Shown here piece by piece: positions 20,718 to 58,895 of a stretch of DNA of 64,000 nucleotides. The stretch spans positions 20,584,001-20,648,000 of the forward strand of contig NC_092346.1 in NCBI RefSeq assembly GCF_963676685.1, written 5' to 3'. The position numbers were made by a program, and so were the translations under genes. Below the pieces are notes generated by a model. It had not been told where the DNA came from. It worked only from the letters and a program-made list of their open reading frames with translations, and did no database searches. The DNA is from Mytilus edulis. Taxonomy: Eukaryota. Position 1 is the stretch's first letter, and each line of letters opens with the position of its first letter.

Positions 20718-20764
20718 TACGCCAGACGCGCGTTTCGTCTACATAAGACTCTTCAGTGACGCTC
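20718..20764 (-). ncRNA. Type I hammerhead ribozyme, intact core
   Basis: Minus strand reads GAGCGUCA-CUGAAGA-GUC uuaugua GAC-GAAA-CGCGCG-UC/UGGCGUA: CUGANGA and GAAA core, stems I and II, palindromic stem III. Confidence 0.85.
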
Positions 20765-26923: not shown

Positions 26924-26970
26924 GAGCGCCACTGATGAGTCGTTTATAGACGAAACGCGCGTCTGGCGTA
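26924..26970 (+). ncRNA. Type I hammerhead ribozyme in a dispersed retrozyme fragment
   Basis: GAGCGCCA-CTGATGA-GTC gtttata GAC-GAAA-CGCGCG-TC/TGGCGTA; stem I GCGCCA pairs with TGGCGT. Confidence 0.88.
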
Positions 26971-29507
26971 AAAAATAATTTAACCCTGGTATCTATGATG
27001 AGTTTATATGCATGGTTATTTTTTTTTTAAAACGCCTTGCTATGTAAATATGTTCATATAACCAAGTTCACTTAAACAATTCTTTAACCTATTTACCTTG
27101 TAACACTCTCAAACAATAACATAACATCAATTTCAGTTCCGACGACACTGGTTTATGGATTAATATGTGTTAGGTCGTATATAGTAAGACACAATCAAAA
27201 AGTGTATTTATGTTTAAACTTATGAGATAATAAAATCGTGTAATACTATGTAAATCCGTTCAATCTTATACAAAAATTCGAAAAATGTCATTTAAATCTT
27301 TTTACCAAAAACAATTCTTTTTAAATCTGGTTGAACTGATACTGTAAGGCGAAAGTAGTAAAACCATACAGAATTTCAATGCTTTTTAACTTCGTACTTT
27401 ATTTGGCCTTTTTGATAATTCAATTCTAGTTTTACTTTTGTAGAAGAAACGCCTACGCGCATATGGAGAGCAAACTTTCAACCCTGAGAACAATGATGAG
27501 TTAATGTTACAATGCTCAAATCAAGTAATTCGGTCAGAAAGACAAATCAAGGTAACAGAAAAAACCCGAAGTAAGGGATAAACTAAGATAATACTTTTAA
27601 AATGTTTCATATTTGGAGATTTAACCTAAACAATGCAGTGTAAACCTTTTTAATCTGATGAAACATTCTGTAGCAGTTTATACATGTATATGTGTTTAAA
27701 CTGATGCGACTAACTTGATTTATATTCTGACAATCTGCTAAAACTGATTTGACAAATCCATACAATTATAAATCGGTTTCAGTGGATGAAATTTACATAA
27801 GACTGTGTAAAATATTTTTGAAATTTGGATATGATCTAAAATAATGATTTAAAATTCAGTTTGGTCAAATATTCTTGCATTTTTTTTTATCGAAGAGATG
27901 AATGATACCAATGTGACATTTAAACTTCTGTGATAAGTCAAAGGTACTACGAAAAGACAAATAAGTCTACAAAACACTAGAGAAGTAAAGAGGAACACGA
28001 ACTCCACCAAAAAGGGATGTGATAATCCTGCTCCAGAAGGATAAACAGATCTTGAATTCCGGTTTGTTATTGGTGTCCAAACAATCAATTCAACACAATG
28101 GAGCAAAGACAAAAAAGAGAGATGCTATTGTTGTTAATTTGCAGTTTTTATGCGTTCTCATTGTGTTATTTTAATTTTGTCCCTACAGTTGTAAAGTGAT
28201 CTGGTGTATTATTGTTTTCTTTTATGATCGATTAATACTATCTACGTTCATTATTTCCACGCATGAATTTAGTGTAAATACGTTATAAACAGTCAGAGAA
28301 AAACATGTCCTTGTGCAATGCCAAAAAAATATTGATGCATATGCATATGTATAAAACAATAATATTGTGTTTGCTTTTCATTTATTGATAACAAAATCAA
28401 TAATAATACCAAATAAACAATATTCAAAGATTTGATTAAATTATTGAATTGGTAACCTTTTAGACTACGTTTATCTGAAGAGTGATTAGGATTGCCAGGA
28501 TCGTTTCTACATTTCCGGGCACGGAAAACAACATCTCCGTAAAATGAGGATGTGCTATCCCGTTTGAAATAAGTTTTCTATAGAAAGTACAACCAAACTT
28601 CAAAATCAGATCTTTATATGTATAGACGAATTTAGTAAAGGTTTCAGTAATTTGTGGTAACGGAATCCCTGACTTAATAGTTTACCAGCAATACGTATGG
28701 TATGCAATGAAATAGTGATGCCAAAGAGTTCACGTGCAATCCTGTTTATTTTCAGCTACGTCTTATTTTGTAAATTTACTTAATATCTAGTTATTTGGAA
28801 AATATTTGGAATTTAGCTTCATCTTTTTTGTTCCCTTTGATGATGTTGTATTATTAGACTTTGAATATAACACAAAAAAAAAGAGCGCACCTTTGGTCCA
28901 CATATGAATGTCAACAAATAAAGATATGCACCACTACAATTAGCCAAACCCTGATGTTTACCCTAATATGAAGGTTTCATTTCTAATAAATGAACCCAAG
29001 GTAACCATATTAGAAAATATTAGGAATATAACAGGAATACAAGACAGACTTTATTATACTTGTTAGTAATGATATAATATATGCGGAATTTCGAAATAGA
29101 AGTGTCAAGTCAAAAGTATTTTATCAAGCAGTCAATTTAAATGGACTATAAATATAGATACACTATTGACTGTGATACATTTGTGTTTGTTCAATGAAAC
29201 ATTTAAATAAACACCAGTGTTTAATCGAAAGGTAATATGACACATAAAGAAGTAATAAAAGGTGATAAATGTTTGAAAACTTTTAACCGGATAAAGTTAC
29301 ATAATGTTATAATCTAATTTTGTGGTTTAATTGTACATGTATGACATTTGATTCAATGTCAAGATGTGATTAATAAACTTACCATTTTGTCATCACAAGA
29401 CACATCAAATGCATTGTAGGTTAGATTTTTGTAATAGTATGTAGAGTACTTTTATCAGTCAACATACTTAATTGTATATGGATTTTATCTGGTTATGACA
29501 TTTTTAG

Positions 29508-53800: not shown

Positions 53801-56800
53801 GACTTGATGGAGTGTTGTTGTTTTCATCGTTCCTCAGCGGAAGTTATCGGCTGAACAATTATCCATACCCAGTTCTTACAATTAGTGGGGACTTAGACGG
53901 AATAACGAGAGTAACCAGAATGGTCGATGCATTCGAGTGAGTGATTTTTTGTTATTATAATGATAGTAGTTAGGTAAAATGAAGTTCCTTACATATTCGA
54001 TTAACACGATCAATACATTGTTGTTCTGTGAAATAACAGCATCTAACGTGCGATACTATAAAAATTTGACCTCAGATGAATTTGGCTATGCCTTTAATGT
54101 ATCTTGATCTTTTAACGCCTTACGTTTCTACGCATTTATACATCACTGACTTTCAATTGTTTAAGCTTGAGAATACGGAAGAAGGTAAATATATATAAAC
54201 TACGAAATTTGTTTTACATGCACACGTATAAAAATTGCGGTTTTCATCCAACACAATCATAGGTTTGAACGTAGTTTTCAATTTAGACTCGTTTATATTT
54301 TTTCGTTTGGACTTGTATCATATTTTCCATCCGGTTTATATGATCCGTTCATCCTACATTGACTCTTAAAATTCAAGAGTCTATCTAAAAATGAGGGTAC
54401 TTTTTATATGGCCTTCCAAATACCGTTTCGATCTCTAACATCACTGAAGAGACATTTATTGTCGAAATCCGGATCTGGTGTACTAAAAAGATATTGACAT
54501 CGTGGCCACAAGTTGATTTTTTTTCTGTTTAGTATTAAATTTATATTAAGATCCATTTTGTTACATCTTGTGATCAATTTTATTTGGCAATCGCCAATGG
54601 CAGTCAGCAGGGTTAAAGAACATCAGTTGTTCGACCTGTTAGTCAAATGCGTTTTGTTTAAATAGACGCTCATATCAAAATAGTTATAAAGCCAAACAAT
54701 ACAAAGTTGAAGAGCATAGATTATCCAAAATTCCAAAAAGTTGTGCCAAATACGGCTAAGGTAATCTATAAACACTACCATTTTTTTAATTTATAGGCAG
54801 TGAAAACCGAAATATTTTGACAATGATATATCAAATTTACGTTGGAGTATATGAATCATGTGTTAACAAAATAGTAATTCATTTATTTTCATATGAATAT
54901 AAAACTTTTGAGCATTTTATTGTAATAACCAAAAGAATTTTTTTCATGTTTTTGTGTGTTTTGGGAAGTAAAAAATAATAACTGATATTTATACGAAAAT
55001 TACAGTTTTATAAACTCGGCTTAATTTATAGTTTGTTAGTGCATTGACCGAAAATTAGTAAAATAGTACAGTAAAAAAAAGTAAAAATAATGTAGAAATT
55101 TGAAGAATCGTGATATTTGTATCTAATCTCGAACGATACAATTTAGATTTTCTTTTTCACTTCTTGCCTTTTCATTGATTTTATTACATTGCCTACTCAC
55201 TAACTTACTAATTTTGCACGATTTCATCAAACATTAAAATTGAGAATGGAAATGGGGAATGTGTCAAAGAGACAACAACCCGACCAAATAAAAAACAACA
55301 GCAGAGGGTCACCAACAGGTCTTCAATGTAGCGAGAAATTCCCGCACCCGGAGGCGTCCTTCAGCTGGCCCCTAAACAAATATATACTAGTCCAGTGATA
55401 ATGAACGCCATACTAATTTCCAAATTGTACACAAGAAACTAAAATTAAAATAATACAAACTAACAAAGGCCAGAGGCTCCTGACTTGGGACAGGCGCAAA
55501 AATGCGGCGGGGTTAAACATGTTTGTGAGATCTCAACCCTCCCCCTATACCTCTAACCAATGTAGTAAAGTAAACGCATAACAATACGCACATTAAAATT
55601 CAGTTCAAGAGAAATCCGAGTCTGATGTCAGAAGATGTAACCAAAGAAAATAAACAAAATGACAATAATACATAAATAACAACAGACTACTAGCAGTTAA
55701 CTGACATGCCAGCTCCAGACTTCAATTAAACTGACTGAAAGATTATGATTTCATCATATGAACATCAGGCACAATCCTTCCCGTTAGGGGTTTAGTATCA
55801 TACCATCATAACATATATGAGAAGAACATAACCCGTGTCATGCCAACAACTGTTTTTAGAATAAATGTGTTTAGTTCCGATGCAAAGACCTTATCAGTGA
55901 CTCAATATTAACGCCAAAATATGCAATCTTTAATGACTTGACAACAGTATCGTAATTATATCCCTTCTTAATAAGTCTATTCAAAGGTTTTGTAAGTTTC
56001 TGAGGTGAATACTAACACCTTTGTGCTTTATAAAGAATATTACCATAAAAAATTGGATGTGAAATACCTGAACGTATTAGAAGTCTGCATGTTGAGCTAT
56101 ATTTACGAATGATGTCTTTATACCGATGATAAAATTTAGTAAATGTTTTGACTAGTTTGTGATATCGAAAACCCTGGTGTAATAATTTTTCAGTAATACA
56201 TAAATTTCTCTCGTTAAAATCGAAAACATTGTTACATTAACGAGCGAATCGTACAAGTTGAGATATATAAACACCGTAAGATGGTGACAAGGGAACGTCA
56301 CCATCTAAAAACGGATAATTAACGATAGGAAATGAAAAATCATCCCTTTTATCATAAATTTTAGTATTCAGCTTTCCATTAGTGATATAGATATCAAGAT
56401 CGAGAAAAGGGCAGTGGTCATTGTTAGTATTAGCTTTATTTAAAGTAAGTTCAACAGGATAAATTTCATTAATATACATACTGAAGTCGTCATTATTGAG
56501 AGCCAAAATATCATCCAAATATCTAAAAGTATTATTAAATTTGTTATTCAGATGTTGTTTCGATGGGTCTTTGCTTATTTTTGTCATTGTCTCCATTTAA
56601 ATTAAATTTCAGAGAGCTGGAAGCAGATTTGATACTAGCTCCAACACAAAAATTCACCACACCTGTAATTGTAATGGAAGGTATGAACTATGGACAGTTT
56701 GCATCTGGTACACTTCCACCAGCTGTAGCGGGTTATGACTTGAAACCAGAAATTTCCCAAAAAGATGCATATGATGCTATAGCTAACTACACGAATGCAT

Positions 56801-58895
56801 TTATGCTGTATGTACGGGACACCAATGTATCAGAAGCAACATCTATGCTCGAAGAGGGATATTCTAAAACGCAGTCGATACTTCAAGTGAGTTTGAATCA
56901 TCACCTCATTTCCAGAATTTTTAAATCATTATGATTGTTAACTTGAGTGTTTGTAACTTCGTCCAAAATTGTTTGTTAGCTCTAAGGGGAATATTAACTT
57001 TATTCCACAGAAATGAAATCGGCTAATTTTCCTTTTTTTATATTTGAAAAAATACATAAACTATACAGTTTTGACACACACCAATAATTAAAATTTACAT
57101 TTTAACTCCTGAGTAGCATTGTATTTTCTAAAAATCAAAATTTGCTTTTTAAGCCAATTACCAGTTGCATCGATATAGGCTTTCTCTGACCGCTAATTTG
57201 TTTTGTATAAATGAAGGTACAGATATGACAAACACGAAATGCATATTTAGTATAAAAATACACTTATTTTACAGGAATGAAATACAAAAGGCAATGTCAA
57301 GATTTGAATACCTAAAACTTATGATAAAAATGTATTATCAAAATCAGTCTAGAACCAAAAACTTATGAATATAAGCGACTAAATGATTGTTTTCAATAAA
57401 AAAATCTCATGGAGATGTATTTTTGTATAATTTCAGCCCCTTTCACAAGTGAAAGCTCTTGATGATAATGAAGAATATGTCTCCCATTGGACAAACACTG
57501 CTCAGCAACTTATAGTCAATCTTCTGGATACCTCACTAGTTGAGGTAAAAGATAACACATTGTTATTATCATATAGATATTGTATTAATATTAACATCAA
57601 AAAGCATTTAACACTTATACCGGAGTACCTGAGATCACCCCAGTTTTTGTTGCCATAAGCGAACTTGAAAGGGTTCAATTTTATCTCGATTGACTATATG
57701 ATTATCACAAAAGAGATCATCGAACTCTATATAGGTCTTTAATAAATAACGGCAAATAGAGAATAAATTATAGTATTACTAATCGCCGTATTTGAATATC
57801 AAAAATAAGACAACTTGTGACCGAACGCCGCTATGGATTAAACTTGTGCATCAAAAATAAGACAACGCGTGACCGAACGACGCATGGATTAAACGAGTGC
57901 GCAGCACAAGTTTAATCCATAGCGGCGTTCGGTCACAAGTTGTCTTATTTTTGATATTCAAATACGGCGATTAGTTATACTTTTTATTACATTGGCTAAT
58001 GGCTTTTTTTTATGAAATTAATGTAGAAAATGTAAGGAACTATATATTTTTCCTGCGCATTCACAATTTGTTTTGATCCGACGTTATCGACGTCTTGACA
58101 ACGTCTATTGTTGTATATGACGTCAGAGAGTGAAATAACCACGTTTATTTCACATGTGAAATTATCGGTTTTTATCTAACTTGGAAATCAATGTAATTTA
58201 TTGCAACCAATGTAATAAATGTTTATTGGCCCACCAGATGTAAACTTGAAGGATTATCATAATTGGGAGATTTGAATCATAATACATGTTTTTTAAAAGA
58301 TCTAGTAGAAATGACTTTACCAATGGGAAAGATATATTGAATTAAATCAACTACACAGAATCCCAATATATACACTTGATAAAAACAAAAACAAAACCCC
58401 CAACCAATTTATTGATGTTCTTCCACAAAATTCAAAGCGACCTCCTTAGAAGTGTTACTACCCGCATTTTCGTTAATCTATTGGAAGGATTTCGCGTTTG
58501 GATAGAATATTTAAACTGTGAGATTTTGCAATATAAGTTTTTTTTCCCTAATTTTGCTCACTTATTTAATTTATTTGAACATATCTCAATTGTTTATTTC
58601 AGTTTGATAATACCGAAGAAACACCATCACAGCCTAAATCATTTCGATTTCGCAAACCGCATCAGTCAGATATGTTAAAAATTAACAGCTCTACTGAAGT
58701 ATATTTTCCAAACACAGATGGTACTAAGATTCCTCAAAGTCCCCTACAACTTAAAGCAACTATGACAAATCAAAGAGCTATTAAAACACTCTTGCCATCT
58801 GCACCTTTTGGCGCACCTGCTACCTGTCAAGATATCAATCAGGTACTTGATTTATACGCTGATTATTTACCTCATAATTATTAACTGACATCAAC

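What the first reader, a model, noticed from the sequence alone, without database searches (positions are those of the whole stretch)
55232..56590. A retrotransposon carrying its own SECIS: candidate selenoprotein-encoding Penelope-like (Naiad) family
Seen: about 50 nt after the ORF stop (55871), the minus strand at 55820-55754 folds into a canonical form-2 SECIS (helix I UCAUAU/AUAUGA, AUGAU/UGAU quartet, 11-bp helix II, AAA, CCC/GGG mini-stem). The RT ends without a C-terminal GIY-YIG domain. Established, from memory: Naiad/Chlamys PLEs carry the endonuclease N-terminal to the RT, and some Naiads of clams and spiders were reported to encode selenoproteins. Inference: full-length members of this family recode in-frame UGA as selenocysteine, which would tie retrotransposition to selenium supply. 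Truncated 3' copies would scatter ready-made SECIS elements around the genome. The Sec codons would lie in the missing 5' part; the two stops in this copy are TAA and TAG.
Basis: partly seen in the sequence, partly recalled or inferred. Interest (0 to 1): 0.9.

Follow-up and report, generated by a model that had tools for sequence, protein, structure and literature searches.

The report
Dead copy of selenocysteine-coding Naiad retrotransposon
The window holds a broken 3' fragment of a jumping gene whose full-length copies appear to make their endonuclease/reverse transcriptase by reading four UGA codons as selenocysteine with the help of their own SECIS hairpin; this kind of element was described in clams and spiders in 2021, so this is a new example, not a new principle.

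Summary
Window 55235-56587 (-) is a 1353-bp, 5'-truncated copy of a ~3.96-kb Penelope-like element of the Naiad type. It ends in the RT, has no C-terminal endonuclease, and carries a SECIS at 55754-55820 (-), 50 nt after the TAA stop. Rfam SECIS_1 scores it 32.3 bits, just under the cut-off of 35.

The inference also holds. Full-length copies elsewhere in the genome have a 1008-codon frame with no TAA or TAG and four in-frame TGA. Each TGA aligns to a cysteine that is invariant in 46 Cys-only homologues. The codons between and after the TGAs are under purifying selection (dN/dS 0.11). Divergent relatives carry 1-5 TGA at the same cysteine columns. Their SECIS sits after the stop and keeps AUGA/AA/GA while the helices covary. 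The host has tRNA-Sec and SepSecS genes.

The window copy is dead. It holds only the last ~236 codons, with two private stop mutations and no Sec codon. Its SECIS is intact.

Selenoprotein Naiads are published (Craig et al. 2021, clams and spiders), and this scan reached the same reading on other pieces of this genome. I therefore class it as a new member of a known kind. No expression or Sec-incorporation data could be obtained.

The parts
55235..56587 (-). 5'-truncated copy (1353 bp) of a ~3963-bp Naiad-type Penelope-like retrotransposon
   Evidence: 29 other copies are ~99% identical over exactly this span. All share the 3' end ...CTCAATTTTA, while their 5' ends differ in length.
55874..56587 (-). 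Remnant of the RT C-terminal coding region, roughly codons 766-1002 of the 1002-codon ORF, including the YLDD motif
   Evidence: Translation. tblastn against the full-length copy's protein gives 97% identity over residues 762-1002.
56237..56239 (-). Private nonsense mutation (TAA where 29 other copies have GTA)
56012..56014 (-). Private nonsense mutation (TAG where 29 other copies have CAG)
55871..55873 (-). The family's normal TAA stop codon
55754..55820 (-). SECIS element, form 2. Helix I 55820-55815/55759-55754, AUGA 55809-55806, AAA 55793-55791, mini-stem CCC/GGG, UGAU 55767-55764.
   Evidence: Rfam SECIS_1 32.3 bits. Model R1 64.3 bits, the only hit in the window. Covariation among relatives. 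One substitution in 1950 cells across 30 copies.
55235..55753 (-). Remainder of the 3' UTR/tail. In full-length arrangements this part also forms the pseudo-LTR.
   Evidence: In L031 the last ~1253 bp of the element recur directly upstream of a full-length copy.

Best explanation
Window 55235-56587 (-) is a dead, 5'-truncated insertion of a young, abundant Naiad-clade Penelope-like retrotransposon. Full-length copies of the family (~3.96 kb) encode one ~1002-residue protein with an N-terminal GIY-YIG endonuclease, a CxC linker and a C-terminal RT. Four conserved cysteines in that protein are written as UGA: the second Cys of the C-x4-C-xx-C finger, the Cys before the GIY motif, the first Cys of the CCHH finger, and the Cys 8 residues after the DKA motif. 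The SECIS hairpin in the 3' UTR, 50 nt after the TAA stop, most likely recruits the host SECIS-binding/eEFSec machinery so that the ribosome inserts selenocysteine at each UGA and goes on to make the full protein. Target-primed reverse transcription starts at the 3' end and often stops early. Truncated copies such as this one therefore keep the SECIS but lose the Sec codons. Shown here: the anatomy, TGA at Cys columns, coding constraint across the TGAs, conservation and covariation of the SECIS, and the presence of host tRNA-Sec and SepSecS. Inferred: that Sec is actually inserted, and that the protein is active.
For: Three of four full-length copies examined have a 1008-codon frame free of TAA/TAG with TGA at the same four places (L033 with one extra TGA); in the fourth, L037, the frame is broken. 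All four TGA align to Cys in every non-gapped long homologue: 35/35, 41/41, 42/42 and 46/46. Comparing a full-length copy with a sister subfamily (L065) gives dS 0.29, dN 0.031 and dN/dS 0.107. The ratio is much the same in each segment between and after the TGAs (0.087, 0, 0.110, 0.113), and the TGA codons themselves are kept. At least 99 genomic copies keep the 424-codon stretch between the third and fourth TGA open. All 40 scored copies of the 200 nt that carry the first three TGA are reported at 100% identity. In 30 related metagenome loci (38-52% identity in the EN piece), most in-frame TGA fall on Cys columns 55, 86, 97, 385/387 and 522, and families swap Cys and TGA at those columns. 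Four separate database proteins end exactly one residue before the DKA+8 Cys. For the SECIS: Rfam hits of 26.6-32.3 bits occur in 11 of 16 related loci, all on the sense strand within ~55 nt after the ORF stop and none elsewhere in 69.7 kb. L069 has one 136 nt after its stop. AUGA, AA and GA are invariant in 14 sequences. Twelve of 17 pairs show compensatory changes. 89% of cells are paired against 35-51% when the partners are slid, and 0 of 500 shuffles reach the observed values. The host has five tRNA-Sec genes at 77-80 bits, and ARAGORN calls the two it was run on tRNA-SeC with anticodon TCA. It also has a multi-exon SepSecS gene. The architecture and the Sec positions match Craig et al. 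2021 (PMC8557442).
Against: The Rfam score is below the curated cut-off (32.3 against 35), and the hairpin's energy is not unusual (z -1.06). Copies within the genome are ~99% identical, so conservation of the TGAs within the family mostly reflects recent common descent. I could not test whether Cys-only Naiads lack a SECIS, because no DNA of such a family could be fetched. A few relatives have extra TGA at non-Cys columns; these may simply be damage.
Confidence: 0.9

Rival explanations
1. The TGAs are real stop codons. On this view the family is non-autonomous or dead, is copied in trans by Cys-only Naiads of the same genome, and the SECIS-like hairpin is a chance or unrelated 3' structure.
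For: A Cys-only Naiad family with uninterrupted ~1000-aa frames lives in the same genome and could supply protein in trans. The Rfam score is below the gathering cut-off. The hairpin's energy is unremarkable.
Against: Four stops falling on four invariant Cys columns with no TAA/TAG in 1008 codons is very unlikely by chance. dN/dS of 0.11 downstream of every TGA shows that those codons are translated. Families at about 40-50% protein identity keep TGA at the same Cys columns. The SECIS keeps its position and covaries.
Confidence: 0.03
2. The UGAs are read through, but not (or not only) as selenocysteine: for example by near-cognate readthrough, or by SECIS-dependent insertion of cysteine when selenium is scarce.
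For: The sites are Cys in all other Naiads, so Cys would work there. From general knowledge, not tested here: Cys can be inserted at UGA of some selenoproteins under selenium deficiency.
Against: A conserved, covarying SECIS with an invariant AUGA/AA/GA core is the specific signal for Sec insertion. The host has tRNA-Sec and SepSecS. SECIS-independent readthrough at four sites in a row would be very inefficient.
Confidence: 0.05
3. The window's fragment has been taken over by a host gene as its SECIS.
For: The SECIS in this copy is identical to the family's commonest sequence. It lies 24 nt from a probable host exon.
Against: The element is antisense to that exon and lies upstream of its splice acceptor. 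No in-frame TGA gene was seen nearby on the minus strand. The copy differs from its relatives by under 1%, so it looks like a recent neutral insertion.
Confidence: 0.02

Closest known systems
Selenoprotein-encoding Naiads of clams (Naiad_Scon of Sinonovacula constricta, Naiad_Mmer of Mercenaria mercenaria); Craig, Yushenova, Rodriguez and Arkhipova 2021, PMC8557442
   Same: The architecture is the same: N-terminal GIY-YIG EN, CxC linker, C-terminal RT, pseudo-LTRs, 5' truncation and no hammerhead. UGA stands at the Cys before GIY-YIG, at the first Cys of CCHH and at the Cys 8 residues after DKA. A SECIS follows the UAA/UAG stop.
   Different: This family has a fourth UGA at the second Cys of the C-x4-C-xx-C finger, a position reported only for one spider family. 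Its SECIS lies 50 nt after the stop (1-21 nt in the paper). It has a conserved apical mini-stem (form 2), whereas the paper reports type I. The host appears to be a mussel, not a clam; that name comes from earlier scan notes and I did not test it. I could not align the published consensus sequences, so the phylogenetic relation to the clam families is unknown.
Selenoprotein-encoding Naiads of spiders (Naiad_Sdum, Naiad_Smim of Stegodyphus); same paper
   Same: Several UGA at conserved Cys, including the C-x(2-5)-C-xx-C finger, the pre-GIY Cys and DKA+8, with a SECIS after the stop.
   Different: Different phylum. The paper infers an independent origin. No UGA at CCHH is reported for the spiders.
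Cys-only Naiads of bivalves (e.g. Penelope-2_CGi of Crassostrea; Mytilus Naiads counted in the same paper)
   Same: Same domain order and motifs. A Cys-only family with ~1000-aa open frames is present in this genome.
   Different: Cys codons at all the sites. Whether they lack a SECIS could not be tested here.
Selenoprotein P (multi-Sec host selenoprotein)
   Same: One of the few proteins with several UGA-Sec codons decoded from one mRNA through 3'-UTR SECIS elements.
   Different: A host selenium-transport protein that typically has two SECIS elements (general knowledge). It is unrelated in sequence and is not a mobile element.

Membership tests
Naiad clade of Penelope-like elements (Craig et al. 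2021) | GIY-YIG endonuclease N-terminal to the RT, with none at the C-terminus | tested here: met
   The full-length copy has the IIYLLT-U...QYVGET motifs at residues ~90-115 and ends after the RT. It aligns to homologues whose N-terminus hits Pfam GIY-YIG PF01541 and whose C-terminal half hits RVT_1 weakly. Pfam finds nothing in the pieces of this family itself, because the domain is split by the TGAs.
Naiad clade of Penelope-like elements (Craig et al. 2021) | CX2-5CxxC finger upstream of GIY-YIG, and a CCHH finger inside it | tested here: met
   C-x4-U-xx-C and YLLT-U-NKPG-C align to the Cys columns of the homologues. The His columns are invariant in A3 but were not examined residue by residue in this family.
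Naiad clade of Penelope-like elements (Craig et al. 2021) | CxC linker motif, and DKA motif with a Cys 8 residues downstream | tested here: met
   S-C-N-C at residues 385-387. ADKAANNIIIV-U with U at DKA+8.
Naiad clade of Penelope-like elements (Craig et al. 2021) | Pseudo-LTRs from partial tandem or inverted insertions, and frequent 5' truncation | tested here: met
   Variable 5' ends with a fixed 3' end. A partial tandem copy of the last ~1253 bp lies directly upstream of full-length copies, and inverted copies occur in L033.
Naiad clade of Penelope-like elements (Craig et al. 2021) | No canonical hammerhead ribozyme | tested here: met
   The Rfam scan of the full-length copy and its upstream repeat at E<=1 finds no hammerhead.
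Naiad clade of Penelope-like elements (Craig et al. 2021) | Insertion-in-fingers domain in the RT; preference for (TA)n targets | not tested
   Neither feature was examined.
Eukaryotic selenoprotein gene (family level) | In-frame UGA at a position that is Cys in homologues | tested here: met
   Four of four TGA fall on invariant Cys columns. Cys and TGA interchange among related families.
Eukaryotic selenoprotein gene (family level) | SECIS in the 3' UTR with AUGA, apical AA(A) and GA, and conserved helices | tested here: met
   Rfam 32.3 bits, below the cut-off of 35. The core is invariant and 12 of 17 pairs covary in 14 sequences. SECISearch3 was not available.
Eukaryotic selenoprotein gene (family level) | Coding constraint continues downstream of the UGA | tested here: met
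   dN/dS is 0.09-0.11 in every segment.
Eukaryotic selenoprotein gene (family level) | Host Sec machinery present | tested here: met
   tRNA-Sec hits, with anticodon TCA confirmed in the two genes checked. SepSecS. SECISBP2 and eEFSec were not searched.
Eukaryotic selenoprotein gene (family level) | Selenocysteine actually incorporated | not testable with these tools
   This needs 75Se labelling, mass spectrometry or ribosome profiling.
Selenoprotein gene (the window's own copy) | An intact ORF containing a Sec codon | tested here: not met
   The copy starts near codon 766, downstream of all four TGA, and has two private stops.

The most novel reading that the evidence does not exclude
Sec-coding Naiads may be a large, old bivalve clade in which Cys and Sec have swapped repeatedly at six structural cysteines, giving 1-5 Sec per protein and including the CxC motif. 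Their many 5'-truncated copies scatter working SECIS hairpins through the genome. Some of these may have been captured by host genes to make new selenoproteins, or the element's activity may be limited by selenium supply.
Probability: 0.12. Interest if true: 0.8.

Novelty: new member of a known kind. Interest (0 to 1): 0.45.

Why it matters
Selenoprotein-coding transposons are so far known from four families in two clams and two spiders. This one adds a very abundant, apparently recently active family in another bivalve lineage, with a new combination of four Sec sites. The related loci suggest the clade is broader and more changeable than published: 1-5 Sec codons, and Sec also in the CxC motif. 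Such elements are missed or called broken by standard annotation because their UGAs look like stops. They also spread ready-made SECIS elements, which is a proposed route to new selenoproteins. The window's own copy is an ordinary dead fragment.

Tried and rejected
- The metagenome scan replaced them.
- **Genome-wide SECIS count:** the RF00031 scan scored only 130 of ~47,000 candidates and says nothing about copy number.
- **SECIS stretch as DNA query:** a 200-nt query over the SECIS returned nothing, and the tool gave no reason. Its standing note says it skips words that are very common in this genome, which is my guess at the cause. This is not evidence of rarity.
- **Negative control:** I wanted to test whether Cys-only Naiads lack a SECIS. 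No such DNA was in the window, in the held loci or in viral contigs.
- **Pfam:** nothing was found on the window's pieces or on the inter-TGA pieces.
- **Fold energy:** the single-sequence energy is not significant.
- **Host ORF across the insertion:** the + strand ORF next to the insert does not continue across the insertion site.
- **Method limits:** a first MAFFT run timed out.

Full report
**What is in the window**

- On the minus strand, 56587-55874 is one reading frame. It encodes the C-terminal part of a reverse transcriptase (…FRYLDDIL…) and ends at TAA 55873-55871. Two earlier in-frame stops interrupt it: TAA 56239-56237 and TAG 56014-56012.
- Fifty nucleotides after the final stop, 55820-55754 has every part of a SECIS:
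  - helix I, UCAUAU paired with AUAUGA;
  - AUGA at 55809-55806;
  - a helix II of 10 pairs with one A.G mismatch;
  - AAA at 55793-55791;
  - a CCC/GGG mini-stem;
  - UGAU at 55767-55764.
- Rfam's SECIS_1 model matches 55755-55819 end to end at 32.3 bits (E 5.5e-4 in the 2 kb searched). That is just under its gathering score of 35.
- The hairpin alone is no more stable than shuffled sequence (z -1.06). The case therefore rests on comparison with other copies and relatives.

**It is a truncated copy of an abundant repeat**

- The stretch has at least 984 candidate matches in the 1.37-Gb genome. The 40 that were scored are ~99% identical.
- All copies share the same 3' end (…CTCAATTTTA followed by unique DNA). 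Their 5' ends differ in length, which is the mark of target-primed reverse transcription that stops early.
- The window's copy spans 55235-56587.
- Its two internal stops are private: all 29 other copies read GTA and CAG there. Its SECIS is identical to the commonest sequence of the family.

**Full-length copies**

- Nine longer loci were fetched, and they define a unit of ~3963 bp. It is often preceded by a partial tandem copy of its own last ~1253 bp, and sometimes by inverted copies. This is the pseudo-LTR arrangement typical of Penelope-like elements.
- In three of the four full-length copies examined (L031, L033, L034), a 1008-codon frame contains no TAA or TAG and four TGA at the same places; L033 has one extra TGA. 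The fourth copy, L037, has a broken frame.
- Counted from the first Met, the protein has 1002 residues with TGA at 55, 86, 97 and 522. Their contexts are:

| Residue | Context |
|---|---|
| 55 | C-x4-U-xx-C |
| 86 | U just before the GIY motif |
| 97 | IIYLLT-U-NKPG-C…QYVGET |
| 522 | ADKAANNIIIV-U |

- No hammerhead ribozyme is found in the element.
- At least 99 genomic copies keep the 424 codons between the third and fourth TGA open.
- All 40 scored copies of the 200 nt bearing the first three TGA are reported at 100% identity.

**The TGAs stand where cysteines belong**

- An HMMER search of 1.84 billion proteins with the 424-residue piece found 2789 relatives.
- In the 46 relatives of 840 residues or more, the four TGA columns are Cys in every sequence that is not gapped there: 35/35, 41/41, 42/42 and 46/46.
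- Four such homologues were scanned against Pfam. All hit GIY-YIG at the N-terminus (three above the cut-off), and two hit RVT_1 weakly further on. This is the Naiad domain order.
- The closest database relatives (P0001, P0002, P0004, P0009; 40-46% identical) all end exactly one residue before the DKA+8 cysteine. Two others end just before the CxC motif. That is what a gene caller would produce on meeting a TGA there.

**Divergent relatives**

- A scan of metagenome contigs gave 30 related loci.
- Their ~1000-codon frames free of TAA/TAG carry one to five in-frame TGA that fall on Cys columns 55, 86, 97, 385 (and 387 in one locus) and 522. Different families show different combinations, so Cys and TGA interchange at these sites.
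- Eight further in-frame TGAs fall elsewhere. Three lie at aligned non-Cys columns (312, 567, 922), and five lie outside the region aligned to the query. These may simply be damage.
- On a tree, the 22 Sec-bearing rows form one clade (support 100) against ten Cys-only outgroups. The loci were retrieved with a pattern taken from Sec-type sequences, so this does not show a single origin.

**Selection across the TGAs**

- I compared a full-length copy with a sister subfamily (L065). The result was dS 0.29, dN 0.031 and dN/dS 0.107.
- The ratio is much the same in each of the four segments bounded by the TGAs (0.087, 0, 0.110, 0.113). The TGA codons themselves are retained.
- Codons downstream of each TGA are therefore under protein-level constraint, so translation must pass through all four.

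**The SECIS is conserved in place and in structure**

- In 69.7 kb of related loci, Rfam found SECIS_1 matches (26.6-32.3 bits) in 11 of 16 loci. Every match is on the sense strand within ~55 nt after the ORF's stop, and there are none anywhere else. The five-Sec family has one 136 nt after its stop.
- A sequence-only alignment of 14 elements shows AUGA, the apical AA and the 3' GA invariant.
- RNAalifold predicts helix I, helix II and the mini-stem, and 12 of 17 pairs show compensatory changes.
- On that structure 89% of cells are paired, against 35-51% when the partners are slid by 1-3 columns. No shuffle in 500 reaches the observed pairing or covariation score.
It also finds further SECIS elements in loci that were not used to build it (L078, L055 and, weakly, L058).

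**Host machinery**

- The genome has five tRNA-Sec hits at 77-80 bits. ARAGORN calls the two that were checked tRNA-SeC with anticodon TCA.
- It also has a multi-exon SepSecS gene.

**Comparison with what is known**

- Craig et al. 2021 (PMC8557442) defined the Naiad clade. They reported that four families, from two clams and two spiders, encode selenoproteins with three or four UGA at conserved cysteines:
  - in all four families, the pre-GIY Cys and DKA+8;
  - in the clams, also the first CCHH Cys;
  - in the spiders, also the C-x(2-5)-C-xx-C finger.
  Each has a SECIS just after the stop.
- The present family has the three clam positions plus the second Cys of the upstream finger. Its SECIS has a conserved mini-stem and lies 50 nt from the stop.
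- Relatives found here reach five Sec codons and also place Sec in the CxC motif.
- That paper treats Mytilus Naiads only as abundant elements, not as selenoprotein-coding.
- Earlier notes of this scan reached the same reading on other pieces of this genome and call the host a Mytilus mussel. I did not test the name; the 14 large contigs and 1.37 Gb are compatible with it.

**Verdict**

- The window's own copy is a dead fragment with an intact SECIS and no Sec codon.
- It lies antisense to a probable host exon on the + strand and 24 nt from it, so it cannot serve that gene.
- Still unshown: expression, Sec insertion, any dependence on selenium, and any host use of scattered SECIS copies.

Noticed in passing
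window 26926-26969 (+) and 20719-20762 (-): Two type I hammerhead ribozyme matches above Rfam's gathering score (36.5 and 34.1 bits). The first has the canonical CUGAUGA...GAAAC core. They probably belong to other, hammerhead-bearing Penelope-like elements or retrozymes, not to the Naiad. The flanks of the first show no other copy in the window.
   Followed up: partly
window 56613-56895 (+): An exon-like open frame of about 94 aa, with a tttcag acceptor and an AAG|GTGAGT donor. The Naiad's truncated 5' end lies only 24 nt upstream of the acceptor, in antisense. Pfam finds nothing. A protein-language-model search gives weak leads to alpha/beta-hydrolase families (chlorophyllase, PAF-AH, PETase).
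   Followed up: partly
G000:C10:14401393-14442259 (and contig C945): A tandem array of about 46 tRNA-like genes with an ~895-bp period. Each scores 45.9 bits on the tRNA-Sec model, just under its cut-off of 47. They are distinct from the five true tRNA-Sec genes, four of which lie on C7 at 74.8-75.4 Mb.
   Followed up: no
G000:C11:49934783-49944110: Three head-to-tail copies of a slightly different subfamily (425-codon inter-TGA frame) at a 4035-bp period. Several other places show pairs spaced ~4031 bp apart. These are tandem arrays of whole elements.
   Followed up: no
G000, e.g. C3:66073545-66076226: A second, Cys-only Naiad family in the same genome. It has many copies with uninterrupted ~1000-aa frames and is 40% identical to P0008. 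It would serve as a natural control for the absence of a SECIS.
   Followed up: partly
L082:283-981; L057 and L077; L064; L079: In L082 both cysteines of the CxC motif are TGA. L057 and L077 share an extra in-frame TGA at a non-Cys column (residue 922, ~160 nt before the SECIS). L064 and L079 each have one TGA at a non-Cys column. It is unclear whether these are Sec codons, stops or damage.
   Followed up: no
window 28541-28678 (-): A short, diverged Naiad RT fragment: 43% identity to residues 900-944 of the full-length protein.
   Followed up: no
L031:4799-4863 (-): Because of the partial tandem (pseudo-LTR) arrangement, a full-length copy has a second SECIS upstream of its 5' end as well as the one in its 3' UTR.
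   Followed up: no
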